Virus record (IMG/VR): IMGVR_UViG_3300042147_000020 | Location: 62,001 to 126,000 of that record | Direction: 5' to 3' (one strand) | DNA length: 64,000 bases | Part shown: piece after piece, positions 26,734 to 42,461 of the stretch | Position numbering within the stretch: position 1 is the stretch's first letter | Layout of the letters: the number at the start of each line of letters is the position of its first letter | Notes under the pieces: generated by a model | Databases searched by the model: none | Seen by the model: the letters and a program-made list of their open reading frames with translations, nothing else | What the model was told of the DNA's origin: nothing | Program-made: the position numbers and the translations under genes

Positions 26734-26859
26734 CTAATTAGGATGACCCCTATGCCCTTCTACTCTATACTATCTGGGGTTGGTGTGAACTTATACACGG
26801 AGTCGCTCACAGAGGCTCACAGAGGGCATAAAGCCCCTCACCGGATAACCAGCAAGGGG

Positions 26860-27670
26860 CTCGATGCTTTACACTGCCGTCGGTCGGCTATCTGTGAGTG
26901 GAGTCAGGTCCCCTCTCGGCCAACCTAGTGGGGTCGGAGTAGCCAGGCGTGTTTTCCCACCGAGCGCCCCTGACGGCGACAAGGATTACGGCTAGAACGT
27001 ACGCACCCCTCCAAATGCCCGGCTCGGCTGGTAAAGGTAGGATTCCAATGCGTACGCGATTTACTTAAAGTAAACCCCCTAATGAATTACCCTGTGTCTG
27101 GCCAGACCAAAGGAGCAACACATTAGAGGCTGCACTTTACCAGACGGCTGCCATATAGAGGCTGCGCACCGGTTTGTTACAACTTGAGCCCTTCGCGGGG
27201 GCCCCGTACCTTTTGTCTTACTGGTCGAGTGCGAGTCAACCTATACGACTTCCTGTTATACGTCCGGTTATCCAAGGTTAGGTTGCGGACGCCCCACCCT
27301 TGCCGGGCAGAGATACGTGATCTCCCGCGCTCGCAGGAGACGACGATTTAAGACCCCTGATCCTACCGGCTCTCTGGACAGAGTAGTCACTAGGTTTTGA
27401 CCGTGGTCAGGGGAATTCAAGCTACCCTCTCTCTTAGAGCTGTCTACACTTACACAATGACTCGGGTTAGACCCAAGGTCGTGATTTGGGGTTTGGTCCT
27501 AAAAGTAGTAACCATTCCTACGACAGACAGGGGATTAGCCTGTGAGGGTACAACTTAGGGTGAGTGGGAAAGCCTAAACCTTCCAGACAGTAGTGTGACC
27601 CGACGGGTTGGAGTCACCTGTCCTAGTGGGTAGATAAAGTCCACTTGGCGTTACCGCTACACTCACTTGG
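26860..27670 (-). ncRNA. Candidate large structured non-coding RNA (~800 nt)
   Basis: No credible CDS over ~1 kb. Many hairpins, long-range helices and a crossing helix. Followed by a terminator-like hairpin at ~26825-26870. Confidence 0.6.
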
Positions 27671-27673
27671 GGT

Positions 27674-28519: not shown

Positions 28520-28607
28520 TGGCGGAAGAACAGAGATTCGAACTCTGGGGGCTGTTACACCCGACGGTTTTCAAGACCGTTGCCTTAAACCACTCGGCCA
28601 TCCTTCC
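28520..28607 (-). tRNA. trnS: tRNA-Ser(TGA)
   Basis: Cloverleaf with long variable arm, loop CT-TGA-AA, G73-CCA. Confidence 0.95.
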
Positions 28608-28611
28608 AAAA

Positions 28612-28955
28612 CAAGCCTCGATACTATTCCTCGAGGAAGTCACCGTACAGCCAAGGCGTTAGCTGTAATCCATTGGGAACTGAGCAAGAGTCGAATGGAA
28701 CTCGAAGTCAACATGCTCACTCCATCACTTCGGGACGGAGCACTCACCACCTGTCGTGTAGCCAGTGGATTTGTGGTTGGGTGACACCAGGCAGGGCAGG
28801 CGCTCGGTGTTTGGTCTCGTCGCTCGGTACCACCAAGTCATGCTGAGTTGCCACACGAAGCTCTCTTCTGTAGGCTGTAACAATCCCTACTCGAACCTAT
28901 GAGCCTCGGTCTCAGTGCATTGATAAATGCTATCGACAAGATTTGTGGGCTTAAG
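28612..28955 (-). ncRNA. Candidate structured RNA (~340 nt) in the tRNA leader
   Basis: No ORF. End pairing AAGCC/GGCTT and TCGAT/ATCGA. Hairpins TGAGC/GCTCA, TACAGC/GCTGTA and CTCC/GGAG. Confidence 0.4.
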
Positions 28956-29060
28956 CCTTAGCTCGAGCCATTAACTTTAGCAAGCCTTTTGCCAAGGGCT
29001 TGGTCTTCACCATGCGGCGAGGACGGTAGATCTGGAAGCACGGCATCGCTATTCTCCATT

Positions 29061-29735
29061 TCACTCGTGGGTTGTGGACAACTCACTGATGATGCACACT
29101 GACCCGTCTTCCACAGGAGTAGTATCGCTGTAGTCGACTTGATTGTAGACGCCCCCGTGGAACTGAAGAACACGATCGTTCCAAGAGCTGTCCAACCGTA
29201 GGGCTGGACAGATGGACTTACGACCTTGACACAGAACCGAAACGGATACGGAACCACCGGCGGTCACGTGAACACTGATCTTGAAAGGTACCCCAAGTGG
29301 GACATTCTCCAAGATGGTGGCGTTCATGATTACCGGATCGTCAAAACTAGCACGGAACCCGATCGTGAGCTTACCTTTGTTCCAGAACACCTTAAGCGGC
29401 GGGGTGTTCGAGTCTTTGACATGAAGCTGTGCTACCACAACCTTCTGGGCCCAGTTGACCTTGGTCAACGTCATTGTCTGGCGGCTCCAGTGATGGGCGG
29501 CACTTGACAAGGACCAGTAGTCAGCCTCTTTCCATTCCGTACGAGTACGGTGTACGCTTTTACTCGAAGCCCCCTTTGTGGGAGCAGTGAACTGAATGGA
29601 ACCGTCTTCGAGACGGAGCACGCAGCTTGCACAGTTGGCTAAAGCGTAGTCACCCATGACTTCTAGAGCCACTGGGTCAGTCGGAGAAACAGGTAGCGGT
29701 GTAGCGATGATGTACTGCGATATGTCGACAAACAT
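29061..29735 (-). CDS. Polysaccharide lyase family 7 (alginate lyase-like)
   Basis: ~224 aa. RTEWKE, AQLH and FHGGVYNQ correspond to the PL7 motifs R(S/T)ELR, QIH and YFKAGxYxQ. Confidence 0.8.
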   Translation of the reverse strand: MFVDISQYIIATPLPVSPTDPVALEVMGDYALANCASCVLRLEDGSIQFTAPTKGASSKSVHRTRTEWKEADYWSLSSAAHHWSRQTMTLTKVNWAQKVVVAQLHVKDSNTPPLKVFWNKGKLTIGFRASFDDPVIMNATILENVPLGVPFKISVHVTAGGSVSVSVLCQGRKSICPALRLDSSWNDRVLQFHGGVYNQVDYSDTTPVEDGSVCIISELSTTHE

Positions 29736-29780
29736 TCTGTCATCTCCAGTTAGGACCATAAGATGACGGAACGGGGAATG

Positions 29781-29869
29781 TGGCAGTAGATGAGAGATTC
29801 GAACTCTCGAGGCTGTTACACCTACACCCTTAGCAGGGGCGCTCCTTAATCCATCTCAGACAATCTACT
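29781..29869 (-). tRNA. trnS: tRNA-Ser(GCT)
   Basis: AGTAGAT/ATCTACT acceptor, CT-GCT-AA loop, long variable arm, GCCA end. Confidence 0.92.
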
Positions 29870-29877
29870 GTAAAGCA

Positions 29878-30030
29878 TTTGATCAAGACCCGGTGTGTTG
29901 TCTGTTGTATCCCTAAGGAGCCCCAAGCAGGATTTCGGGTTGTACCTGCAATACGACCTTTGTAGGCCTGTTATACCGTTTAGATAGGTTTTTAACTACT
30001 GGGGCACTTCTACAACACCACTGATCAAAA
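29878..30030 (-). ncRNA. Rod-like structured RNA directly after the tRNA-Asn CCA
   Basis: Terminal helices TTTGATCA/TGATCAAA, GGTGTTGT/ACAACACACC and GCCCCAG/TTGGGGC, with internal hairpins. Confidence 0.5.
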
Positions 30031-30031
30031 C

Positions 30032-30107
30032 TGGCTCCATGACCTGGACTCGAACCAGGGACATCTTAATTAACAGTCAAGCGCTCTACCAACTGAGCTA
30101 CCATGGA
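30032..30107 (-). tRNA. trnN: tRNA-Asn(GTT)
   Basis: Canonical cloverleaf, CT-GTT-AA loop, GCCA end. Confidence 0.95.
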
Positions 30108-30152
30108 ATTTATTCGGTAGTTCTACAAATCATACTGGTTTGCAGTATTTAT

Positions 30153-30476
30153 TTACACATCTTCAATCGGTCGTACTGAACCCTGGAGGTAAACGGAGAC
30201 ATTAGCAGCCGCAGAGTTAGCTAAAACACAACGACCAATGAAAGGGAACACACCGATGGTGTACATACCCACTTCAGCGAATGTCAGGTCTACTACCGGT
30301 ACGTAGGTGCCATCAGGAGCAAGGGCCTCTATCGTCACGTTACCACCACCCAAGGCTCCGGTGATGTAGATGTTCATGGGGTGGGTGTTGTCCATGTAGT
30401 CAAAATGTAAGGACGTGGCGTTCTCAGTGATGTGGTCAAACGCGGTGAAGATGTTACCACGGAGTTTGTTTGACAT
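30153..30476 (-). CDS. Hypothetical beta-rich protein
   Basis: 107 aa. Confidence 0.7.
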   Translation of the reverse strand: MSNKLRGNIFTAFDHITENATSLHFDYMDNTHPMNIYITGALGGGNVTIEALAPDGTYVPVVDLTFAEVGMYTIGVFPFIGRCVLANSAAANVSVYLQGSVRPIEDV

Positions 30477-30585
30477 TTCAGGGACTTCCTAAAGATAGGG
30501 GAAATAAAGGATCGACATACCATAAACGGCATAAAACCGAGCCCGAAGGCTCGGTTTTACTAATTACACGAAGGAGACGTAAAAC

Positions 30586-30768
30586 TTAAGTAGCCTTCAG
30601 GACTTCGGTCACCTTGATCTCGCGATCGTCGTAGACAACGCGCTGAGCTTGTTCACCGTCTTGTAGGATGAACTTCTCGTACACTTCGCCTGTAACGCGA
30701 TTCACGATAACCACTTCAACTTCTTTATCGGAAGCGCAGTGGGCTTGAGTAATTACAGTGGTAGTCAT
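30586..30768 (-). CDS. Small hypothetical protein
   Basis: 60 aa, AAGGAG RBS, followed by a terminator at ~30533-30558. Confidence 0.75.
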   Translation of the reverse strand: MTTTVITQAHCASDKEVEVVIVNRVTGEVYEKFILQDGEQAQRVVYDDREIKVTEVLKAT

Positions 30769-30777
30769 GACGACTCC

Positions 30778-31602
30778 TTAACGACGGTTGTAGTTGATGC
30801 GCTTAACTTCAAGTTCAGCGAACAAGTCCATCGGGTAATCGTCTGGCAGGTGAGCAGCAACTGTAGAGTTGGTGGTCTGCGGGTCGATCACAATGCTGAA
30901 CGGCAGCCGAACGAGGTTGCCCAGTGCACCGTTGATGATGATGTCGCGGTTGATCTTGGTCGCATTGCTGAATCGGGCCGCAACCTCTACACCGTCTTTG
31001 GTAACGATGCGCAGTAACTTGATCGAGTCGATGCTGTCAGTGGAGTCAATCGCTACACCACTGGCTCCGATCAGGCCGAACAGAGACTTGCGATCGCCGT
31101 CCTTCAACGGGAGACGGATCACCGAAGTGTCGCTCACGATGGTAGGTTCGTGTAGGATCTGCCAGTCTTCAGCCAGTTGATCCGATTGTGCCGGAGTCCA
31201 CGGGGTGAATACGTTCTGTGCAGTCTTCATGCCGACCCATGGTGCGAGTGTTGGACACTCGTTCTCACCGGGCTTGTAACCGACAGTTCCACAACCCACG
31301 TCGTAATGACCAGGCTGAACCATTACCAACCACATACCTTGACCATTCCACGAAGGACGCGTAACACGCTTGCCTTGCTTCAGGGCTTCGATGGCTAACC
31401 CGAAGGTCAGAGAATCGCACGGACGGTAGCTGTCCTCGAACACGGCTTTAGGCGACCAAGACTGGTGACCGTTGTCGTATTCCACAAGGTAGCCTTCATC
31501 GGCACCGTTTTCGTCAGCAGGTAACTCCCAGCCTTTGAGTTGGTTGTAGTCCAACCGAGACATCGGAGTTCCGATAACCTTCTTGGTACCAATGTAGTTC
31601 AT
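30778..31602 (-). CDS. tad2: DUF2829 / Tad2-family protein with N- and C-terminal extensions
   Basis: LTFGLAIEALKQGKRVTRPSWNGQGMWL...MKTAQNVFTPWTPAQSDQLAEDW is the DUF2829 signature. Confidence 0.8.
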   Translation of the reverse strand: MNYIGTKKVIGTPMSRLDYNQLKGWELPADENGADEGYLVEYDNGHQSWSPKAVFEDSYRPCDSLTFGLAIEALKQGKRVTRPSWNGQGMWLVMVQPGHYDVGCGTVGYKPGENECPTLAPWVGMKTAQNVFTPWTPAQSDQLAEDWQILHEPTIVSDTSVIRLPLKDGDRKSLFGLIGASGVAIDSTDSIDSIKLLRIVTKDGVEVAARFSNATKINRDIIINGALGNLVRLPFSIVIDPQTTNSTVAAHLPDDYPMDLFAELEVKRINYNRR

Positions 31603-31624
31603 GTTATCTACCTTGAATGAATGA

Positions 31625-31703
31625 GGGTCCCCCTACCGGATTCGAACCGATGCTCGCTACCCACGAAGGGCGGCAGCTCTAACCGACTGAGCTTAAGGGC
31701 GAC
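31625..31703 (-). pseudogene. Degenerate tRNA
   Basis: D arm and T arm (ATCGG-TTCGAAT-CCGGT) intact. G:G mismatch in the acceptor, irregular anticodon arm, no CCA. Confidence 0.6.
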
Positions 31704-31710
31704 ATTAAAA

Positions 31711-31872
31711 CTAGCAAACCATCACAGGGACGGGAATGCCTTGTTCTTTGCAAACACGCTCAAGGTTAGCCTGAGCATCCTGCCATTGTTTTAGTCTGGC
31801 GAGGGTTTCCTCACGAGACTGGGGTTTGATCTTGGAACGATCCAGATCACTTAAGCGAAATGTACGTACCAT
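31711..31872 (-). CDS. 53-aa hypothetical protein (below the ORF-track cutoff)
   Basis: MVRTFRLSDLDRSKIKPQSREETLARLKQWQ..., GGGAG RBS. Confidence 0.6.
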   Translation of the reverse strand: MVRTFRLSDLDRSKIKPQSREETLARLKQWQDAQANLERVCKEQGIPVPVMVC

Positions 31873-31881
31873 GACTACTCC

Positions 31882-32133
31882 CTAATCAATAGCGATGCGA
31901 CCGTAAAGGGTTCGCCCGCCGACTTTGACGTCGAAGTGATGGAAGTAACGACCGGTATCGCTACCGAGCCATTTGTCAGTTCCGTTGTCTAGTTCAACTG
32001 CATAACAATCGCCTTTCCATTTACGGATGGCTTGACTCACCTTATTACAAGAGTAAGTCACTTGCCTTGCAGAGAACGTAGGGAACAGTTGCTTAACGAT
32101 CCGACGCATCGCTGCGAAGTGTCCTTCAGACAT
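31882..32133 (-). CDS. Hypothetical protein
   Basis: 83 aa, AGGAG RBS. Confidence 0.75.
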   Translation of the reverse strand: MSEGHFAAMRRIVKQLFPTFSARQVTYSCNKVSQAIRKWKGDCYAVELDNGTDKWLGSDTGRYFHHFDVKVGGRTLYGRIAID

Positions 32134-32149
32134 TGACTGCTCTCCTGAA

Positions 32150-32225
32150 TGGCTCCGGGCCTTGGGTTCGAACCAAGGACCAACGCATTAACAGTACGCT
32201 GCTCTACCAACTGAGCTAACCCGAA
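32150..32225 (-). tRNA. trnN: tRNA-Asn(GTT), second divergent copy
   Basis: Canonical cloverleaf, CT-GTT-AA loop, GCCA end. Confidence 0.93.
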
Positions 32226-32231
32226 AGAATT

Positions 32232-32365
32232 TGGTGGTCAGTACCGGACTCTTAACCGGCTGCATCCATCTTACGACTAAAACTGCCCCGACTCGTAAGC
32301 AGTGGAAGGTTTCTAACGTAGAACGCGTTGTTTTCCCTAGGTTATCGCTACATGAGTCAGCGACC
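32232..32365 (-). ncRNA. ACCA-ending RNA with acceptor and T-like arms and an internal pseudoknot
   Basis: GGTCGCT/ACTGACC-ACCA, CCGG-TTAAGAGT-CCGG arm, crossing helices ACTGC/GCAGT and CTTACGA/TCGTAAG. Confidence 0.45.
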
Positions 32366-32395
32366 AGTGTGATCCTAGTTTCTCTCTACGTTGAT

Positions 32396-32530
32396 TTTTT
32401 GAAGTTGACAGGGGAGAAGGGCGGCTCGTTTTATCTCCCGACTTGTACCCATGCACCTTAATGAACCACTGGGCGGCTCCTTTGAGTGCGGTTCGGCTGT
32501 ACCCTACCGTCTGTCAATCAACTTCAAAAA
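32396..32530 (-). ncRNA. Rod-like structured RNA directly after the tRNA-Asp CCA
   Basis: TTTTTGAAG/CTTCAAAAA, TTGACAG/CTGTCAA and AGGG/CCCT stacked helices. Confidence 0.5.
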
Positions 32531-32532
32531 AG

Positions 32533-32609
32533 TGGCGCCTCCGAACGGACTCGAACCGTCGACCCCTAGCGTGACAGGCTAGTGCTCTAACCAACTGAGC
32601 TACGGAAGC
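32533..32609 (-). tRNA. trnD: tRNA-Asp(GTC)
   Basis: Canonical cloverleaf, CT-GTC-AC loop, GCCA end. Confidence 0.95.
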
Positions 32610-32692
32610 AATGAAAAGTCCTGCTGGGCTTGCAGCGAGCTAACGGCGAACCGTTTGGTGCAAGAGCTGATCCAGCAGGGTGTTCTTGAAAT

Positions 32693-33126
32693 TGGCTCTG
32701 GCTTGCTTCCCGTTTGAATCGGGTCACTGAACTCGTTGTACGTAGGTACCCGCCAGACCGGTCGAAGACAAGGCTACTTCCTAAGACATCGCCAAGTCAC
32801 AATCTCGTTATCCTAAGCCACCCCCTAGGCACCTAATTGGATAACGTTACTACGTACGAGTTTGGGTGATCCTCCCGGCGTCTGAACGCCGAGTTAATGC
32901 ACAGTGAGCCGGATTTTCGTAACGCACAAAGGCAAACGACACGGCATGGCAAAGGATCATGTTCTACTCTACTTGCCCGTGGGTTAGAAGTCCTAGACTT
33001 ATTTTCCCTGATCACCGTAGATCAATGACGTAGCTCCGTGGCCTACTCCTTTCTAGGGGAGAGCAAACTTCGCGTTACAGGGTAAAACCATTACGTAGCC
33101 AGCAAGGGTCTCCGCAATGTTAAAAG
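32693..33126 (-). ncRNA. Structured RNA after tRNA-Gln (element B, up to ~430 nt)
   Basis: Shares ordered motifs with element A. Further helices AACTCG/CGAGTT, TACGTAG/CTACGTA, GTTATCC/GGATAAC and CGGCGT/ACGCCG. Confidence 0.5.
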
Positions 33127-33205
33127 TGGAAGAGGGAGATGGATTCGAACCATCGAATGTCGGGATCAAAACCCGATGCCTTTGGCCAGACTTGGCGATC
33201 CCTCT
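33127..33205 (-). tRNA. trnQ: tRNA-Gln(TTG)
   Basis: AGAGGGA/TCCCTCT acceptor, TT-TTG-AT loop, CCA end. Confidence 0.92.
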
Positions 33206-33209
33206 AGAA

Positions 33210-33351
33210 TTTTCTCACCTCGCCGCTAGGACGGCCCTAGCGACTTATTTTGCCGTGACCCCGGAGTTCAAGGTTGTCGACTCGGCTCGTTACGCCTTGC
33301 CCTACACGGTAAAACCCATGTGTAGGCACGAAGGCCAGCACATGTTAAAAG
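33210..33351 (-). ncRNA. Structured RNA after tRNA-Tyr (element A, ~140 nt)
   Basis: Hairpins CCTACAC/GTGTAGG and CGCTAGG/CCTAGCG, with motifs shared with element B. Confidence 0.55.
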
Positions 33352-33437
33352 TGGTGGGTGAGGTAGGATTCGAACCTACGAAGCACACGGCGTCAGATTT
33401 ACAATCTGATAACTTTGAACCACTTGTATACTCACCC
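33352..33437 (-). tRNA. trnY: tRNA-Tyr(GTA)
   Basis: GGGTGAG/CTCACCC acceptor, TT-GTA-AA loop, variable arm, ACCA end. Confidence 0.93.
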
Positions 33438-33444
33438 GATAAAG

Positions 33445-33566
33445 CTGCCGGTGTCGTGCATCGAAGCACTGCTAGTTCCCGGACCGCACTAGCTTTCCAT
33501 TAACGAAGGCTGACGCGTTGTCAGCTATGGCCCTCGGTAATGACTCCCCTGGAGTACACCTGCACA
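33445..33566 (-). ncRNA. Multibranch structured RNA (~120 nt) with a T-loop-like arm
   Basis: Closing helix GCAGGTGT/ACACCGGC. Arms ACTCC/GGAGT, GCTGAC/GTCAGC, GCTAGT/ACTAGC and GTGC-TTCGAT-GCAC. Confidence 0.5.
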
Positions 33567-33572
33567 ATAGAT

Positions 33573-33730
33573 TGCCCCTTGGTTGGATTCGAACCAACGA
33601 CCCTATCCGTTCAACCGACTCCGTTTAACGGGAGAGTTTAGTTACACCCGCTCAGTCAACTCCACCTTACGGTTCATGTTGCGAATACGAATGCTCTCGG
33701 ACTGTTCTACCAGACTGAACTACAAGAGGC
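33573..33730 (-). ncRNA. tRNA-like RNA with an 88-nt insert in place of the anticodon loop
   Basis: Acceptor CCTCTTG/CAAGGGG with a possible G-1:C73 pair, D arm GTTC/GAAC, T arm GTTGG-TTCGAAT-CCAAC. GTCCG/CGGAT encloses 33610-33697. Confidence 0.8.
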
Positions 33731-33747
33731 ACAAACCTTTAAAACTA

Positions 33748-33848
33748 GGCCCCTAGGATCAGATTCGAACTGATGACCTTCACAGAGACACTACCTCAAT
33801 TCAGTAGGCGTGTCTCTACAGCGCTCTAACCATCTGAGCTACCCAGGG
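33748..33848 (-). ncRNA. tRNA-like RNA with a 42-nt extended anticodon arm
   Basis: Acceptor CCCTGGG/CCTAGGG, D arm GCTC/GAGC, T arm ATCAG-TTCGAAT-CTGAT. Arm AGAGACAC/GTGTCTCT plus CTAC/GTAG. Confidence 0.8.
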
Positions 33849-33856
33849 AGAAACCT

Positions 33857-34009
33857 TTAAAACTCACCACGTTCTGGGCGAGCCTTAGTGGCTGCGATAC
33901 CAACAAAGAACACGACTGCGAATACACCCAGTCCTGCTGTTGGGTTAAACGCTGCCGGAATCGCTGCCGTGATTAGCGCTGGTACAAAAACAAACACTGC
34001 ACGCATCAT
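33857..34009 (-). CDS. 50-aa membrane protein (below the ORF-track cutoff)
   Basis: MMRAVFVFVPALITAAIPAAFNPTAGLGVFAVVFFVGIAATKARPERGEF, GGGAG RBS. Confidence 0.65.
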   Translation of the reverse strand: MMRAVFVFVPALITAAIPAAFNPTAGLGVFAVVFFVGIAATKARPERGEF

Positions 34010-34029
34010 GACAACAACTCCCTATTAAA

Positions 34030-34310
34030 TTAACCGCTACCCCGACCTACGGACTGCAATACAACAAGTGTGTCCCAAAAGGAAAAGAAAGAAAACCTTT
34101 GGGGGATGTGGTATGCAAGCACATCGTAGAGCACACTGTTGCCGGGTCACGCTCGACTAAACCGTAGTTTCACTGATACCCGTCGAACCAGTGTATCCCT
34201 GACCAGGGAAACCCCCCTAGAGCCGTGAAGAACTAGGTCGTGCTGGAGTCACTACTATCAGTCGATAACGCGTTAGTCTCTCAATAGATGCGCGGAGTAT
34301 GTAAAATAAT
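34030..34310 (-). ncRNA. Candidate structured RNA (~280 nt) at the head of the tRNA operon
   Basis: No ORF. Helices TCGACT/AGTCGA, CCCTG/CAGGG, GATAC/GTATC, GATGTG/CACATC and CCCAAAGG/CCTTTTGGG. Confidence 0.4.
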
Positions 34311-34323
34311 ACGTAATCTCAGG

Positions 34324-34353
34324 CAAAAAAAAAAGGGTTCTCGAAAGAACCCC
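34324..34353 (-). terminator. Intrinsic terminator
   Basis: GGGTTCT-TTCG-AGAACCC followed by T10. Confidence 0.85.
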
Positions 34354-34366
34354 TGAAGGGAGGATG

Positions 34367-34777
34367 TTACGGAATCGCAGGAAAGCCTACAATCTTGAGG
34401 ATCAGGTTACGCTTACGGCGGTACCAACCAGCGGACTTGGCAGGGAAGCCTCTCTCAGTGCTCTGCTTGCGGATCTGAGGGTCGTCTTCGAACAACAGGG
34501 GCACTGGGAAGTATCTCCAGTGTTTCGGTTCGCCAGAGCGCACCAGAGCGTGCAGGGTACGTTTGCTCCACTTACTGGTAGTGATACCAGTGATCAGTTC
34601 TTGACGGATCTCTTCGTGGTCAGCTTCGGTTGGGTACACGGCGAAGATGTTCTTGTAGTGGGCAACAGTCGTCTTGTCTTCATTGGTTGTCTTGTCCATT
34701 ATAAAGAGGACGCCACCAATGTCGTGGAGAGAGATGTTACCATTCTCGTATTTGTGTGTTACGTAATCTGCGGACAT
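34367..34777 (-). CDS. Early hypothetical protein
   Basis: 136 aa with RBS and an upstream early promoter. Confidence 0.75.
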   Translation of the reverse strand: MSADYVTHKYENGNISLHDIGGVLFIMDKTTNEDKTTVAHYKNIFAVYPTEADHEEIRQELITGITTSKWSKRTLHALVRSGEPKHWRYFPVPLLFEDDPQIRKQSTERGFPAKSAGWYRRKRNLILKIVGFPAIP

Positions 34778-34830: not shown

Positions 34831-34848
34831 GGTAATATAGATCTGAAA
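34831..34848 (-). promoter_or_regulatory. Early promoter
   Basis: Minus strand TTTCAGATCTATATTACC. Confidence 0.7.
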
Positions 34849-34906: not shown

Positions 34907-35524
34907 ATGGGGCGTTTAGAAAATCTGCTCAAGGAAGCGATGTTTACCTTGACGTACAGTGCAGAAGGAATCGCTTTGCTGGATGCTAGCGAAGCCGAAG
35001 TTCCTACCAAGGATATTTATATCCTGTTAACCGACACCAAGACCTTAGTAAGTAAGGTGAGTCGCATGGTGACCGGTGATCCGTACAACCACGTATCGCT
35101 GATGCTGTCCGATGACTTTGACAAGGGTATCTATACCTTCAGTCTCTCGAACGGTTTAAACGGCATCTTTGGTGGCTTCATGGTGGAAGATCGTAAGAAC
35201 CTGAAAGGCTCTCACTACTCCATGTACCGTATGGCCGTCACCAGTAGCGTCTACGACAAGATCCGGGCTAAGGTGAGTGACTATGTTAACGCGGTAGACA
35301 AAACCTCCTACAACCACCTTGGGTTGTTCAATGCGATCTTCAAGAAAGGCATCTTCAAGTCTGAGGATGGCCAAGCTGCGATCTGTTCTGAATTCGTAGT
35401 GGAAGTGCTTAAGTTCGCTGGCGTAGAACTCTTCGCCAAAAGATTAGCGAGCACTGTAAGACCTTACGAGATGGTTAAATCCAAGTTGCTGAAGTTCTAC
35501 AAGCGTGGCGTCATAAAAGGTTAA
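34907..35524 (+). CDS. Permuted papain-like NlpC/P60 (YiiX/YaeF-type) hydrolase, possibly virion-processed
   Basis: His-before-Cys order YNHVSL...CSEFV, N-terminal S-A-E motif. Confidence 0.65.
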   Translation: MGRLENLLKEAMFTLTYSAEGIALLDASEAEVPTKDIYILLTDTKTLVSKVSRMVTGDPYNHVSLMLSDDFDKGIYTFSLSNGLNGIFGGFMVEDRKNLKGSHYSMYRMAVTSSVYDKIRAKVSDYVNAVDKTSYNHLGLFNAIFKKGIFKSEDGQAAICSEFVVEVLKFAGVELFAKRLASTVRPYEMVKSKLLKFYKRGVIKG

Positions 35525-35574
35525 ACCCTCCGGCTCACTTCGGTGGGTCGGTTTATGACGGCATAGAAGGGATG

Positions 35575-36125
35575 CTCGAGGGCCACTTAGGAAAGTCCAT
35601 AGATACACCCTCACGATCGGAGGAGTATCGTCACAATCCTGAAGAGTCCCTGCGGCTTCCATGATCTTCTATGTTTCTTACTGTTAAGTAGAACTGGCTT
35701 GTCGTACCCGTGATCGTCTTCCCTCCAACGCGTTAGGAGAGTACTGGCTCATTCGAGCACTACCTTAGATCCACACTGTTTTTGTGCTTACACCGTCGTG
35801 CTACTCCGGCCCCAAACTGAGGCTCTATCACATTGAAATGCTCGTGAACCTCTAAGCGCTATAAGGTGGCCAAGAGGTATGCTTACCCGGCCCTTTGCCG
35901 AGTGCATTACCACCGAACCACTTAAAGGTGATCTTAGAAAGGCGCAAGGCGTTTGATTGTGGTTTGCCGGAATCTCTCCCTATGTCGGGTATCAAACTGA
36001 ACACGAGCGTGTGCATCAGTCTGAAAAGAGCGAACTCTCTAACCCAACTAGAAATCCCCAACCAAAGCCAGTTCTTCAACTCTTCTGTCACGGTGTGCGC
36101 GTAAACCGTTGGCTTCAGGCTCAAG
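35575..36125 (-). ncRNA. Candidate large structured non-coding RNA (~550 nt)
   Basis: Nested long-range helices: 11 bp at 35690-35700/36065-36075 and 7 bp at 35641-35647/36079-36085. TATAAT at 36126-36131. No convincing ORF. Confidence 0.55.
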
Positions 36126-36135
36126 ATTATACTTT

Positions 36136-36474
36136 TCAGAAGTCCTCTATGCCAGACCACGTACCACGAACGTGCGGCTGTCGGTACTCCTCCAAGTTAC
36201 TACGCAGTAACTCAGGCCTGTGGTGCGCATGCCATCGCCGTTCTACTTCTACCACCGGGTCGTAGTCTAAGACCATCCCGGCTGTGAGTGAAGGCACAAT
36301 GGCACCGCAATCCAAGTGATTGAAAATTCCAGGGTCAACGCCAATGAAGATCCGTTGACGTGATTCAGCCTGGTATTCATCTTCCGTAACCACGTCAATG
36401 CCGTGGTCCACTAGAAGTCTCACTAAACCTAGTGCGCAACCGCCGAGGATCAAGATCTTTCGGCTGCTACTCAA
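36136..36474 (-). CDS. Hypothetical protein
   Basis: 112 aa, AAGGA RBS. Confidence 0.7.
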   Translation of the reverse strand: MSSSRKILILGGCALGLVRLLVDHGIDVVTEDEYQAESRQRIFIGVDPGIFNHLDCGAIVPSLTAGMVLDYDPVVEVERRWHAHHRPELLRSNLEEYRQPHVRGTWSGIEDF

Positions 36475-36486
36475 TAGACATCCTTA

Positions 36487-36678
36487 TCAGCCCAGCCCGA
36501 CACCAGAAGGACGGTTCTCGACCTGATGTTTCGCAGGATCGTAAACTACCTTCTCGTAACAGTTGTGCCAAGGTTTACCCAAACAGCAAGTGCAATGGAA
36601 CGGGGCTGCCACTGGATTGCTCAGGAGTTCAATGACTCCGCACTTGTCGCAAGCGTATTCCAGCAGCGTACCGCTCAT
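36487..36678 (-). CDS. Small Zn-ribbon protein
   Basis: CxxC (CDKC) and CxCC. Start overlaps the phuZ stop. Confidence 0.7.
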   Translation of the reverse strand: MSGTLLEYACDKCGVIELLSNPVAAPFHCTCCLGKPWHNCYEKVVYDPAKHQVENRPSGVGLG

Positions 36679-37640
36679 TACAACACCAGGCCGTCGTCAG
36701 TAGTGGCAGTGTCGCCCACCAGATCGACAGCAGCAGCACGGCCTTCACGACGACGAATGAAGTCGTCCAGAGTCTTCTGGAGTTTCTCGTAAGTAGCATC
36801 GAGATTCTCGGTGGACACTACGAGGTGAACTTCTTTGACGCCTTCGATAGCAGTCGTGAAGTAACCGGTGCACGGATATTCCGGGATCGGCTCTTCGAGA
36901 TGCTTCTGATCACGGTCGCTGTACAACGAAGCGATGGTGATCGGGTCCTTGATGACCTTGACGTCTTCCGGGTTGTAGAAGATGTCCAACATCGCCAGTT
37001 GTGCAGGCACGCTGGTCGAGTGGTTGAAACGCAACCAGTTGGCAACGTCTTTGGTATCCAGCTCGTCGTTCTGACGCGAAGTCAGGTAGCACAGGCTGGA
37101 GATGGCCAGGTTGATTTGACCGTCGACTACCGAACGAGTGCAGTCGCCGCCGTTGTGGCGGTAGTACATGACGATCGGGGTATCGACTTGCTTGGAGATG
37201 GCTGCCAGCGACTTGATGGTGTTCAAGGTGTTCTGTGCAGTGATGGTCGATTCCGAAGAACCAGCCAACAGCACAACTACCGAGTGACCGCGAGCTGCCA
37301 GTTCTTTTGCCAGCAACGGACCGATGACCGAACCCGAACCGCCGGACGCCGAGAAGACCACGATGTTGAAATCTTCGGGGGCTTGCTTCAGCAGGATTTG
37401 CTTGACCGCTGCGGAGATCTGCGCGTGGTTCTCTTTACGCACTTTACCGGAGCCATCAGTTTTGTCGAGGACGTAGATCGAGTCTTCGTTGGTGATACCG
37501 GCCAAGTTGGAACGGCTGGTGTCAATGAAGCTGACCAGAGGGGTCGCGAAGCCAGGAGCTGGCGGACGGTCGATGTAGGCCTTGACGATGTTCGTACCCA
37601 GACCACCACAGCCGTACAGACGCACTTTACCTTGTTCCAT
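36678..37640 (-). CDS. phuZ: PhuZ phage tubulin
   Basis: 320 aa. GCGGLG, tubulin signature SASGGSGS and C-terminal DDGLVL tail. Confidence 0.93.
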   Translation of the reverse strand: MEQGKVRLYGCGGLGTNIVKAYIDRPPAPGFATPLVSFIDTSRSNLAGITNEDSIYVLDKTDGSGKVRKENHAQISAAVKQILLKQAPEDFNIVVFSASGGSGSVIGPLLAKELAARGHSVVVLLAGSSESTITAQNTLNTIKSLAAISKQVDTPIVMYYRHNGGDCTRSVVDGQINLAISSLCYLTSRQNDELDTKDVANWLRFNHSTSVPAQLAMLDIFYNPEDVKVIKDPITIASLYSDRDQKHLEEPIPEYPCTGYFTTAIEGVKEVHLVVSTENLDATYEKLQKTLDDFIRRREGRAAAVDLVGDTATTDDGLVL

Positions 37641-41855: not shown

Positions 41856-42461
41856 TTAGATGGAGGACTCTTGGTTGTTGGCCAACTCGTTCATGGCACG
41901 AGCCACAATGTCATCGGCAGTTTCCACAGTCGCATCCGCCGCAGGCAGTGGCGAAGCGATCTGGTAGAGCGCTTGACGCAGTTCATCGGTCAGTTCCGCA
42001 CCCAGCGTACCGGGTACGTTGGTACCGTGCATCACGTTCAACAGGTCTTTGTCCACCGGGTCGATTTTGGTGTGACCGGTGAGTTCATCAACCTGTTCCC
42101 AGACGCGAGCCGTGAAGCCCGCCTCTTTCAGCTCGTGTTGCTCACACAACCCTGCGATCTTGGCGATCTCATGGTCGACCACGGCCAGAGCCGCTGGGTC
42201 GTTGTTATGATCGGCCTTTTTGTGGGCGTCGTGTAGAACCACGATTTCTTTAACGATCCGATCTTTCGGCCAGTTCTTCAACATGGTTTCCAAGACCGGA
42301 CCTGGTTGACTGCGTGGTACCACAGCCTCACGACGGACAGCTACAGGAACTGTCGAAGGCCGAGATTTAGGAGCGTTGTTTTGTGCGAAGATCGCCGAGA
42401 TGATTGCGTTGTTTTGGGCACGCATATTGGCGATGAGGTTGCTGCTACGTACTACTTGCAT
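41856..42461 (-). CDS. Hypothetical protein
   Basis: 201 aa, AAGGAG RBS. Confidence 0.75.
   Translation of the reverse strand: MQVVRSSNLIANMRAQNNAIISAIFAQNNAPKSRPSTVPVAVRREAVVPRSQPGPVLETMLKNWPKDRIVKEIVVLHDAHKKADHNNDPAALAVVDHEIAKIAGLCEQHELKEAGFTARVWEQVDELTGHTKIDPVDKDLLNVMHGTNVPGTLGAELTDELRQALYQIASPLPAADATVETADDIVARAMNELANNQESSI

What the first reader, a model, noticed from the sequence alone, without database searches (positions are those of the whole stretch)
35575..36131. Second large candidate ncRNA (~550 nt) at the other edge of the island
Seen: nested long-range helices (11 bp AGAACTGGCTT/AAGCCAGTTCT, 7 bp GAAGAGT/ACTCTTC, CTTGAG/CTCGAG at the ends), local hairpins and a TATAAT hexamer immediately upstream on the minus strand. 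Only unconvincing ORFs are present. It shares TGGACTTT with the 800-nt element. Inference: an independently promoted structured RNA downstream of the phuZ operon, similar in size to ROOL RNAs (a size analogy only).
Basis: partly seen in the sequence, partly recalled or inferred. Interest (0 to 1): 0.7.

Follow-up and report, generated by a model that had tools for sequence, protein, structure and literature searches.

The report
New large structured RNA in jumbo phage
The flagged stretch is a real, roughly 560-base folded non-coding RNA at the end of the tubulin (phuZ) operon of an uncultured nucleus-forming jumbo phage; it matches no described RNA family and its function is unknown.

Summary
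Window 36116..35556 (minus strand) is a structured non-coding RNA. About 14 distinct homologues exist, all in uncultured soil, compost or rhizosphere chimallivirus-like contigs.

- **Conservation:** the 5' 180 nt differ by about 6% between phages whose flanking genes differ by 25-28%.
- **Not coding:** substitutions show no codon periodicity, so the 102-aa ORF is not under coding selection.
- **Structure:** a 94-pair model is 95% paired. It has 22 pairs with compensatory changes, against 8.4±1.9 in shuffles and 3-7 in slid controls. G·U outnumbers A·C 143:13, which fixes the strand.
- **Known families:** Rfam 15 gives nothing, including ROOL, GOLLD and introns.
the quoted helices exist in the window but are not conserved. 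The TATAAT fits neither of the phage's recognisable signals (early promoter, late TATG).
- **Transcription unit:** no terminator separates phuZ from the element, and the element ends in the phiKZ-type terminator tail (YTATGCCGT). It is most likely the 3'-terminal part of the phuZ transcription unit.
- **Expression:** short contigs in seven metatranscriptome runs cover only this element, which suggests expression.
- **Relatives:** a sister clade has a different ~480-nt structured RNA at the same site with the same 3' module. Several distant chimalliviruses have strongly folding gaps after phuZ.

Function is inferred only: a stable trans-acting scaffold or decoy RNA.

The parts
35556..36116 (-). 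Whole conserved RNA element, about 560 nt, read 36116 -> 35556. The true 5' end is not mapped and may lie upstream.
   Evidence: Alignments A3 and A6 of 13 homologues. 94-pair model: 95% paired, 22 compensatory pairs. G.U 143 against A.C 13.
35938..36116 (-). 5' core domain of 179 nt: six helices around a multi-helix junction, with invariant single strands (GACAGAAGAGUUGAAGAAC, CGGCAAACCACAAUCAA, CCUUGCGCC).
   Evidence: 48 pairs, 98.3% paired; 14 pairs with changes on both sides against 5.1±1.4 in shuffles and 2-4 in slid controls. Model R1. 91-95% identical to L010 where flanking genes are 65-88%.
36025..36040 (-). Helix H5: hairpin capped by a UUCG tetraloop (GAGAG-UUCG-CUCUU).
   Evidence: Two covarying pairs: AU:8/UA:5 and GC:10/AU:3.
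35992..36024 (-). Helix H6: 12-bp hairpin whose loop carries the invariant GCUCGU.
   Evidence: Six pairs with changes on both sides; L026 carries three double changes.
35948..36069 (-). Helices H2, H3 and H4, the nested stems that close the core domain (GGCUUUGGUUG/CAAUCAAACGCC and others).
Evidence: Compensatory changes in each.
36090..36109 (-). Helix H1: hairpin ACGGU/ACCGU with a loop holding a GCGC/UGCGCA palindrome.
   Evidence: Always paired but nearly invariant. The loop could pair with UGCGC at 35942-35946 or with another copy of the RNA; this is untested.
35862..35924 (-). Hairpin M1: long stem with internal loops and a GCAAAGGGC loop.
   Evidence: Helices 8-10; 5 pairs with changes on both sides, including L011/L012.
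35840..35845 (-). Invariant ACGAGC, a candidate pseudoknot partner of GCUCGU (36003-36008) in the H6 loop.
   Evidence: Both hexamers are identical in all 13 sequences, although their surroundings diverge in L011/L012. There is no covariation, so this is only a candidate.
35809..35823 (-). Hairpin M2b (GCCUC-loop-GGGGC).
   Evidence: 13/13 paired; two pairs with changes on both sides.
35683..35808 (-). Variable central region of lineage-specific hairpins.
   Evidence: Indels and swapped hairpins in A6. For example, GUCC..GGAC in L009 against GACC..GGUC in L026.
35674..35682 (-). Invariant single-stranded AGUAAGAAA.
   Evidence: Identical in all 13 sequences.
35563..35672 (-). 3'-terminal module: AU-rich closing stem (AUAGAAG/CUUCUAU), inner helix GCCG[C]AGGG / CCCU-CG[A]GC, and a variable hairpin.
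   Evidence: The closing stem covaries (AU:9/GC:4). The inner helix motif is shared with sister clade B.
35556..35566 (-). Terminator tail CUAUGCCGUCA, the likely 3' end of the transcript.
   Evidence: 58 'hairpin + YTATGC' sites in the genome; 39 follow a gene end and 26 face a convergent gene. It matches the mapped phiKZ terminator motif ...YTTATKYYGT (PMC10914365).
36126..36131 (-). TATAAT hexamer next to the ORF-A stop codon. A promoter role is not supported; it may be an AU-rich processing site.
   Evidence: Exact TATAAT in 10 of 13 sequences of A6. Early-promoter PWM score -30. Sigma-70 scan is at chance level.
35852..36160 (-). 102-aa ORF-B, an open frame that is not a gene.
   Evidence: No codon periodicity. 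No Pfam or PHROG match. Its ends and frame vary between relatives, and it is fused to ORF-A in L009.
36136..36474 (-). ORF-A, 112 aa: a fast-evolving small protein gene directly upstream. The last gene of the phuZ unit.
   Evidence: Weak similarity to the ORF at the same place in clade B (E 0.005). No family match.
35526..35552 (+). Terminator hairpin (UUCG loop) of the convergent 205-aa gene, followed by TTTATGACGG. It is not part of the RNA.
   Evidence: Read directly from the sequence. It pairs perfectly, with G.U pairs, only on the + strand.

Best explanation
The element is a structured non-coding RNA of about 560 nt, read from the minus strand. It forms the last part of the phuZ / 63-aa / ORF-A transcription unit of an uncultured nucleus-forming (chimallivirus-like) jumbo phage.

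**Shown: three parts.**
1. A strongly conserved 5' core of six helices around a junction, including a UUCG-capped hairpin.
2. A central region where conserved hairpins and invariant islands alternate with lineage-specific hairpins.
3. A 3' module whose closing stem is followed directly by the phage's own terminator tail (YUAUGCCGU). The module therefore doubles as the terminator of the unit.

**Inferred.**
- RNA polymerase reads through from the phuZ operon and stops at this module.
- The folded RNA then persists, either attached to the mRNA or cut free near the AU-rich GUAUAAU at its 5' edge.
- It acts in trans as a compact folded scaffold or decoy for a partner that is still unknown (a protein, RNA or ribosome), possibly as a multimer. 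This would resemble the other large phage RNAs, ROOL and GOLLD.

The function is not shown.
For: **Not coding.** Substitutions are spread evenly over the three codon positions, while real neighbouring genes show a strong third-position excess. ORF-B has no family match.

**Selected at the nucleotide level.** The 5' domain differs by about 6% between the window and L010, against 25-28% in the flanking genes.

**Structure.**
- 5' domain: 48 pairs, 98.3% paired, 14 compensatory pairs; 0 of 500 shuffles reach this and slid controls give 2-4.
- Whole model: 94 pairs, 95% paired, 22 compensatory pairs against 8.4±1.9 in shuffles and 3-7 in slid controls.

**Strand.** G.U 143 against A.C 13. The minus strand also folds better than the plus strand.

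**Transcription unit.**
- No terminator-like site lies between phuZ and the element on the minus strand.
- The element ends in the genome-wide terminator tail, which equals the experimentally mapped phiKZ terminator motif (PMC10914365).
- Metatranscriptome contigs X19, X21 and X22 span the ORF-A/RNA border.

**Expression.** In seven RNA-library runs from at least three studies, the only contigs matching a 1.4-2.8-kb stretch lie within 35710-36249. They are short (150-680 nt), and one has depth 21.

**Same site in a sister clade.** It holds another conserved structured RNA with the same 3' module.
Against: - No 5' or 3' end has been mapped, and the contigs carry no strand information.
- DNA carry-over in the RNA libraries cannot be excluded. 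Relatives' flanking genes may fall below the 80% likeness threshold and so go unseen.
- The thermodynamic signal for the whole element is modest (z about -2.2 to -2.7).
- Several long-range pairings rest on invariant sequence and cannot be tested by covariation. There are competing alternatives for CCUUGCGCC.
- All homologues belong to one narrow clade. The two most informative sequences (L011/L012) supply many of the double changes, so the number of independent events is smaller than the cell counts suggest.
- Nothing tested here speaks to the trans-acting function or to multimer formation. The one complex prediction I submitted was not folded.
Confidence: 0.72

Rival explanations
1. One reading: a free-standing RNA gene with its own promoter. 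Transcription starts a few bases downstream of the TATAAT at 36131-36126, driven by host sigma-70 RNA polymerase or by a phage polymerase.
For: TATAAT with a CTGGCA -35-like hexamer at 18 nt scores 10/12. A TATAAT-like hexamer is kept in most homologues, and L009 has TATATTAC, the phiKZ early-promoter core, at that spot.
Against: - Sigma-70-like matches occur at chance frequency (4 found, 3.8 expected).
- The site scores -30 on the profile of the phage's 22 early promoters.
- L008, L011 and L012 lack a usable hexamer.
- The putative -35 lies in ORF-A coding sequence, so its conservation says little.
- phiKZ-type phages transcribe independently of host RNA polymerase (PMC10914365).
- RNA-library contigs run upstream across the site.
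Confidence: 0.2
2. It acts only in cis, as an elaborate 3' untranslated region. It would stabilise, localise or time the translation of the phuZ-operon mRNA, for example during export from the phage nucleus, and has no role as a separate molecule.
For: There is no terminator between the genes and the element. The 3' module doubles as the terminator. Large folded stretches follow phuZ in several distant chimalliviruses.
Against: A protective 3' end does not need 180 nt of near-invariant multi-helix core with conserved single strands. The upstream ORF-A evolves fast while the RNA is nearly frozen. Metatranscriptome contigs mostly cover the element rather than the genes, although that observation carries caveats.
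Confidence: 0.25
3. It is protein-coding: the 102-aa ORF 35852..36160, or another short frame, is the functional product.
For: A minus-strand frame stays open for 83-141 codons in all relatives and is fused to ORF-A in L009. Gene callers have predicted it in public assemblies.
Against: - No codon periodicity in any frame, against clear periodicity in the controls.
- Start, stop and frame differ between relatives.
- No family match.
- The changes that do occur are compensatory for RNA helices.

The frame stays open because the nucleotides are frozen.
Confidence: 0.02
4. It is a DNA-level element, such as a replication origin, packaging site or protein-binding array, and is conserved as double-stranded DNA.
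For: It is a conserved non-coding stretch at a junction of convergent genes, and it contains palindromes (CTCGAG, GCGC).
Against: G.U pairs are tolerated eleven times more often than A.C, which is strand-specific RNA behaviour. Compensatory changes occur in helices with UUCG loops. There are no repeated binding-site arrays. RNA-library contigs cover it.
Confidence: 0.03
5. It is a remnant or an unusual form of a self-splicing or mobile ribozyme (a group I or II intron, or an omega-RNA-like guide).
For: The size and multi-helix architecture are in the intron range. Jumbo phages do carry introns (PMC11512511).
Against: - No Rfam intron, ribozyme or guide-RNA model matches, even at E <= 10.
- There are no flanking exons, because the element sits after a stop codon and before a terminator.
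- No reverse transcriptase, homing endonuclease, TnpB or IscB gene is nearby.
- No joints were seen in the laid contigs.
Confidence: 0.04

Closest known systems
ROOL RNA (Rfam RF03087; about 580 nt)
   Same: Similar size. Encoded by phages, near a tRNA island (the nearest tRNA is 2.1 kb away). Many helices, candidate pseudoknots and few proteins to explain it. Function unknown (PMC5737381; bioRxiv 10.1101/2024.12.08.627333).
   Different: No match to the Rfam model, even at E <= 10. The hosts and phages differ: a Gram-negative-type nucleus-forming jumbo phage against mostly Firmicutes prophages. This element is much more conserved in sequence within its clade. It sits at the 3' end of a protein operon and carries that operon's terminator. 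Multimer or cage formation is untested.
GOLLD RNA (over 800 nt)
   Same: A large phage RNA found near tRNA islands. It has one conserved half and one variable half; here the 5' half is conserved and the 3' half is variable.
   Different: No Rfam match. The polarity of conservation is reversed, since GOLLD's 3' half is the conserved one. The RNA is smaller and has no embedded tRNA.
3'UTR-derived non-coding RNAs of phages and bacteria (for example PAK_P3 ncRNA1/2 and phiKZ 3'UTR_PHIKZ298)
   Same: Made from the end of an mRNA and sharing its terminator. Such RNAs have been seen in Pseudomonas phages by ONT-cappable-seq and Northern blot (PMC10914365).
   Different: Those are 90-210 nt and simple. 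This one is about 560 nt with a covarying multi-helix core. Its processing has not been shown.
phiKZ-type intrinsic terminator motif (BCCYCCCCHWWDGGGRRGGBYTTATKYYGT)
   Same: The element ends with CUUCUAUGCCGU, the same tail found at 58 sites in this genome.
   Different: The usual short GC hairpin is replaced by a closing stem that encloses a structured module of about 100 nt.
OLE RNA (about 600 nt)
   Same: Size; highly conserved nucleotides interspersed in an intricate fold.
   Different: OLE is bacterial and is found with its protein partners OapA/B/C. There is no Rfam match here, and no such genes are nearby.

Membership tests
ROOL RNA | [quoted passage not shown] | tested here: not met
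   cmscan of the whole window at gathering thresholds finds only tRNAs. cmscan of 35450-36250 at E <= 10 finds only two chance hits to unrelated families.
ROOL RNA | Phage or prophage location, often near tRNA genes | tested here: met
   Jumbo-phage contig with PhuZ. Eight tRNA genes lie at 28520-33437 on the same strand. The element is 2.1 kb from the nearest, with two genes between.
ROOL RNA | Assembly into an RNA-only multimeric cage | not testable with these tools
   This needs cryo-EM or native gels of the transcript. The only complex job I submitted was not folded.
GOLLD RNA | Match to the Rfam covariance model | tested here: not met
Group I / group II introns and small self-cleaving ribozymes | Match to the Rfam models; flanking exons or an intron-encoded protein | tested here: not met
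   No Rfam match. The element lies between a stop codon and a terminator. There is no RT or endonuclease gene.
tRNA / tmRNA / RNase P RNA | Detection by ARAGORN or Rfam | tested here: not met
   ARAGORN finds nothing in 35500-36200; neither does Rfam. The GGAAAGUCC-like string is on the plus strand, in a non-conserved segment.
phiKZ-type terminator | Stem-loop directly followed by YTTATKYYGT, downstream of a gene on the same strand | tested here: inconclusive
   The tail CTTCTATGCCGT is present and invariant. The stem before it is a covarying closing stem around a 100-nt module, not the usual short hairpin, so my hairpin filter did not list it. Termination itself has not been measured.
Protein-coding gene (ORF-B) | Third-position excess of substitutions; conserved start, stop and frame | tested here: not met
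phiKZ-type early promoter upstream of the RNA | Extended consensus ...TTTCARRYN-TATATTAC-YTARGTG | tested here: not met
   PWM from 12 exact sites recovers 22 sites, all on the minus strand. The element's TATAAT region scores -30, at about rank 5000.

The most novel reading that the evidence does not exclude
Large structured RNAs at the end of the phuZ (phage tubulin) operon are a recurrent feature of nucleus-forming jumbo phages, and exist in several unrelated or very diverged classes:
- this 560-nt class
- the 480-nt sister-clade class, which shares its 3' module
- the 480-860-nt strongly folding gaps after phuZ in Burkholderia phage FLC9, Erwinia phage PhiEaH1 and two IMG/VR lineages

On this reading they have a shared role. 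It would be tied either to the cell biology of the phage nucleus and spindle, or to RNA-only assemblies of the ROOL/GOLLD kind.
Probability: 0.15. Interest if true: 0.85.

Novelty: new variant of a known kind. Interest (0 to 1): 0.64.

Why it matters
Very few large structured RNAs of bacteria and phages are known (ROOL, GOLLD, OLE, raiA). Their functions are a long-standing puzzle, and two of them turned out to build RNA-only cages.

This is a new family of that size class.
- It has clear covariation support and signs of expression in soil.
- It sits in nucleus-forming jumbo phages. My literature searches found only short candidate RNAs reported there, of at most about 200 nt or under 250 nt by the authors' size filter.
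- Its near-frozen 180-nt core, in phages whose proteins diverge freely, points to a demanding molecular job.
- Its fixed place behind the phage tubulin gene, mirrored by other folded stretches in distant relatives, gives a concrete and testable handle. The RNA can be transcribed in vitro for probing and cryo-EM without having the phage in culture.

Tried and rejected
**Searches for known relatives or wider distribution**
- blastn of the region against 50,697 phage records: no match.
- Rfam at gathering and at E <= 10: nothing.
- Pattern scans of IMG/VR: only the six relatives. L016, L018 and L019 are chance hits inside genes.
Only 5 are real by model R1 (L046, L052, L077, L079, L114); the rest are chance.
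- Pattern scan of the genomes of 185,579 prokaryote species: 6 hits, as many as chance predicts, and none real.
- R1 in the phage's own genome: no second copy.
- R1 in five cultured chimalliviruses and in 80 PhuZ-bearing IMG/VR loci: only the known clade.

**Ideas tested and dropped**
- Early-promoter reading of the TATAAT: rejected by PWM.
- 'YTATGCCG is a late TATG promoter': rejected, because 26 sites face a convergent gene end and 39 follow a gene end.
- Antisense or sense matches of the RNA elsewhere in the phage genome: nothing beyond 12-14-mers inside genes.
- ORF-A as an informative neighbour: no Pfam, PHROG or Atlas lead.
- Complex prediction of the RNA with ORF-A: the tool did not fold it, so it gives no evidence.

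**Left unresolved**
- Two alternative partners for CCUUGCGCC could not be told apart, because all partners are invariant. One is the H1 loop GCGCA; the other is GCCGCAGGG of the 3' module.
- I favour GCCGCAGGG/CCCUCGAGC inside the 3' module, because the same motif recurs in clade B.

Full report
**Where the window comes from.** The window is part of a 238.8-kb IMG/VR virus record. It encodes a PhuZ tubulin at 36678..37640 (-), which matches Pfam TubZ_C_2 and Tubulin and PHROG 'tubulin PhuZ'. Its best identity to a cultured phage is 41%. The phage is therefore an uncultured relative of the nucleus-forming jumbo phages. Runs that hold the sequence come from rhizosphere, soil, compost, plant, sediment and wastewater samples.

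**The locus.** The flagged stretch lies between two convergent genes.
- On the plus strand, a 205-aa ORF at 34907..35524 ends in its own UUCG-loop hairpin at 35526-35552.
- On the minus strand, the series phuZ, a 63-aa zinc-ribbon ORF and the 112-aa ORF-A (36136..36474) runs towards it.
- Eight tRNA genes lie further along the minus strand at 28520-33437.

**Checking the observation.** Energy alone is weak evidence: z is -2.2 to -2.7 for the minus strand and -0.65 to -0.9 for the plus strand. The comparative data change the picture, as the next sections show.

**Relatives.** The homologues came from four searches.
- Six IMG/VR contigs carry the same locus at 70-90% identity.
- Searching the spurious 102-aa 'protein' in the protein database led to further contigs from compost and other assemblies.
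- A metagenome pattern scan, filtered with a covariance model, added five more matches, one of them identical to a contig already in hand.
- In all there are about 14 distinct sequences. The two most distant, L011 and L012, are 57-63% identical to the window over the element.

**It is not coding.**
- In the frame of the 102-aa ORF, substitutions fall evenly on the three codon positions: 28/33/33 and 28/34/31 against L011 and L012.
- The 205-aa gene gives 39/23/100 and PhuZ gives 99/70/148.
- The three classes cover the wobble position of every frame on both strands, so no frame is under coding selection.
- The ORF's ends and frame differ between relatives, and in L009 it is fused to ORF-A. It has no family match.
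- The frame stays open because the nucleotides are frozen. The 5' 250 nt differ by about 6% between the window and L010, whose flanking genes differ by 25-28%.

**It is a folded RNA made from the minus strand.**
- For the 5' 179 nt I fixed six helices by hand from the alignments and counted them on 11 sequences. Of the cells, 98.3% are paired, and 14 of 48 pairs have changes on both sides. Shuffles give 5.1±1.4 and none of 500 reaches the observed value. Sliding the partners by 1-3 columns gives 2-4.
- Clear examples are the UUCG-capped hairpin (AGAG/CUCU, AGUG/CACU, AGUA/UACU) and helix H6, where L026 carries three double changes.
- A model of the whole element has 94 pairs including one candidate pseudoknot. 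It is 95% paired, with 22 compensatory pairs, against 8.4±1.9 in shuffles and 3-7 in slid controls.
- G·U cells outnumber A·C cells 143 to 13. The same pairs read on the plus strand would be only 84% paired. This also argues against a purely DNA-level element.
- A caveat applies. The sequences are related, and L011/L012 contribute many of the double changes, so the independent events are fewer than the cell counts.

- The 5' arm of the 11-bp helix (GAAGAACUGGCUU) belongs to helix H2, GGCUUUGGUUG/CAAUCAAACGCC, which covaries (C-G to U-A, U-A to C-G). The 3' arm changes without compensation in L009 and the L010 group, and is missing in L011/L012.
- The 7-bp helix and the terminal CUUGAG/CUCGAG pairing depend on window-specific variants.
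- The shared TGGACUUU lies in a segment that other members replace.

**Anatomy** (window coordinates).
- 5' core, 36116-35938: helices H1-H6 and invariant single strands.
- Hairpin M1, 35924-35862.
- An invariant ACGAGC at 35845-35840, complementary to the invariant GCUCGU in the H6 loop. This is a candidate pseudoknot without covariation.
- Hairpin M2b, 35823-35809.
- A variable stretch of lineage-specific hairpins, 35808-35683.
- An invariant AGUAAGAAA, 35682-35674.
- A 3' module, 35672-35563, closed by an AU-rich stem that covaries (A-U in nine sequences, G-C in four). It contains GCCG[C]AGGG paired with CCCU-CG[A]GC.

**The ends.**
- The element finishes with CUUCUAUGCCGUCA. In this genome, 'hairpin + YTATGC(C/G)(G/C)' occurs 58 times. 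Of these, 39 follow a same-strand gene end and 26 face the end of a convergent gene. It is therefore a terminator signal, not a promoter.
- It equals the motif found at experimentally mapped phiKZ terminators, a stem-loop followed by TTAT, written ...GGBYTTATKYYGT (PMC10914365).
- No such site, and no hairpin-plus-T-run site, lies on the minus strand between phuZ and the element. The simplest reading is that the phuZ unit runs through the element and stops at its 3' module.
- At the 5' side, the TATAAT is a poor candidate for a promoter. The phage has 22 phiKZ-type early promoters with core TATATTAC, as in PMC7058600, all on the minus strand. The TATAAT region scores -30 on their profile, against +22 to +57 for the real sites. 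There is no late-type TATG (PMC7618050). Sigma-70-like matches are no more frequent than in shuffles.
- The AU-rich GUAUAAU could instead be a processing site. That is a guess.

**Expression.**
- In seven runs from RNA libraries (soil and unspecified metagenome samples, at least three studies), the only contigs that match a 1.4-2.8-kb stretch lie within 35710-36249. They are 150-680 nt long, and one has depth 21.
- Three of them cross the TATAAT into ORF-A.
- This fits an abundant, stable RNA that is continuous with ORF-A. It is not proof. Contigs have no strand, DNA carry-over is possible, and flanking genes of these relatives may be too diverged to be laid.

**Distribution.**
- Model R1 finds one copy in the phage's own genome. 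It finds none in five cultured chimalliviruses. Among 80 PhuZ loci from IMG/VR it finds only the six relatives.
- The next clade (PhuZ 58-59% identical; L164-L167, L170) keeps the synteny but lacks the core. In its place it has a conserved ~480-nt region with 160 predicted pairs, 13 of them compensatory among only four sequences.
- That region ends in the same module: an AU-rich closing stem, GCCG[C]AG paired with CU-CG[A]G, then UAUGCCG. The composite pattern occurs only in these two clades among 238 fetched loci.
- Either the body diverged beyond recognition, or it was replaced while the 3' module was kept.

**Further afield.** Unannotated stretches directly after phuZ fold far better than shuffles on phuZ's strand in several genomes:

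| Genome / locus | Length | z, phuZ strand | z, opposite strand |
|---|---|---|---|
| Burkholderia phage FLC9 | 770 nt | -7.1 | -4.0 |
| IMG/VR L173 | 861 nt | -6.9 | -3.2 |
| IMG/VR L177 | 809 nt | -5.0 | -2.0 |
| Erwinia phage PhiEaH1 | 481 nt | -3.8 | -2.9 |
| phuZ coding controls | 570, 770 nt | -1.35, -1.7 | not run |

None of these stretches has an Rfam match. phiKZ itself has no such gap.

**What it does.** Nothing here measures function.
- Several features point to a folded RNA that works as a molecule in its own right: a scaffold, a decoy or a catalytic RNA. These are the frozen multi-helix core with conserved single strands, the free evolution of the neighbouring small protein, the phage context near a tRNA island, and the likely abundance.
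- The closest analogues are ROOL and GOLLD, which are phage-borne, often near tRNA islands, abundant, of unknown function, and assemble into RNA-only cages.
- Membership in those families is excluded by the Rfam models.
- Palindromic invariant stretches (CUCGAG, GCGC/UGCGCA) could mediate self-association, but they also have plausible partners within the molecule.
- A purely cis role as an elaborate 3' UTR of the phuZ mRNA is the main rival.

**Verdict.** This is a real new family of large structured phage RNA.

Noticed in passing
whole genome G000; in the window e.g. 39374(-), 39399(+), 30534(-), 26831(-): 58 sites of 'GC hairpin + YTATGC(C/G)(G/C)', often as back-to-back pairs between convergent genes. 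This is the phage's terminator signal and equals the published phiKZ terminator motif, so the motif is conserved across distant chimalliviruses; FLC9 has it too.
   Followed up: yes
whole genome G000; in the window 34839, 43622, 44053, 59561, 60994, 26724, 9150, 18772, 18289, 4302 (all minus strand): 22 phiKZ-type early promoters with an extended consensus (...ATTcAAA...TTTCARRYN-TATATTAC-YTARGTGAATA), every one on the minus strand. One at 34839 drives the 136-aa ORF 34367..34777, just beyond the convergent 205-aa gene.
   Followed up: partly
L164:5490-5957, L165:5490-5969, L166, L167, L170 (IMG/VR; phuZ on +): The sister clade carries, at the same site, a different conserved structured RNA of about 480 nt. 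It shares only the 3' module (GCCG[C]AG / CU-CG[A]G, AU-rich closing stem, UAUGCCG) with the window's RNA.
   Followed up: partly
L153:3985-4754 (Burkholderia phage FLC9), L173:4458-5318, L177:4467-5275, L152:3952-4432 (Erwinia phage PhiEaH1): Unannotated stretches right after phuZ fold far better than shuffles on phuZ's strand (z -7.1, -6.9, -5.0, -3.8). They have no Rfam match and no similarity to the window's RNA. phiKZ has no such gap.
   Followed up: partly
window 26830-27673 and 33500-34360, minus strand: Two other ORF-poor stretches at the edges of the tRNA island fold at z about -3 on the minus strand (+0.9 and -2.3 on the plus strand). Model R1 finds no relation to the present RNA.
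   Followed up: partly
L009:4948-5562 (minus strand of the locus): In one relative, ORF-A and the spurious ORF-B are fused into a single 204-codon open frame. A gene caller would report a longer protein there.
   Followed up: no
window 35577-35592 (minus strand: UAUGG-ACUUU-CCUAAG): The window's own variant of the 3' module contains the two halves of the classic 11-nt GAAA-tetraloop receptor (UAUGG / CCUAAG). No other family member has it, so it may be chance.
   Followed up: no
window 36070-36083, 42269-42282; genome position 173662-173675 relative to the window origin: The 13-14-mer GUUGAAGAACUGG(C) of the RNA's conserved single strand recurs twice more on the minus strand of the genome. The copy at 42282 lies inside ORF 41856..42461. 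This could reflect codon-biased V-E-E-L coding or something else.
   Followed up: no
window 34907-35524 (+): The convergent 205-aa gene matches PHROG 1128, annotated 'enoyl-CoA hydratase/carnithine racemase-like', category moron/host takeover (E 4.6e-10). It has no Pfam match. It is the only plus-strand gene in a long run of minus-strand genes.
   Followed up: no
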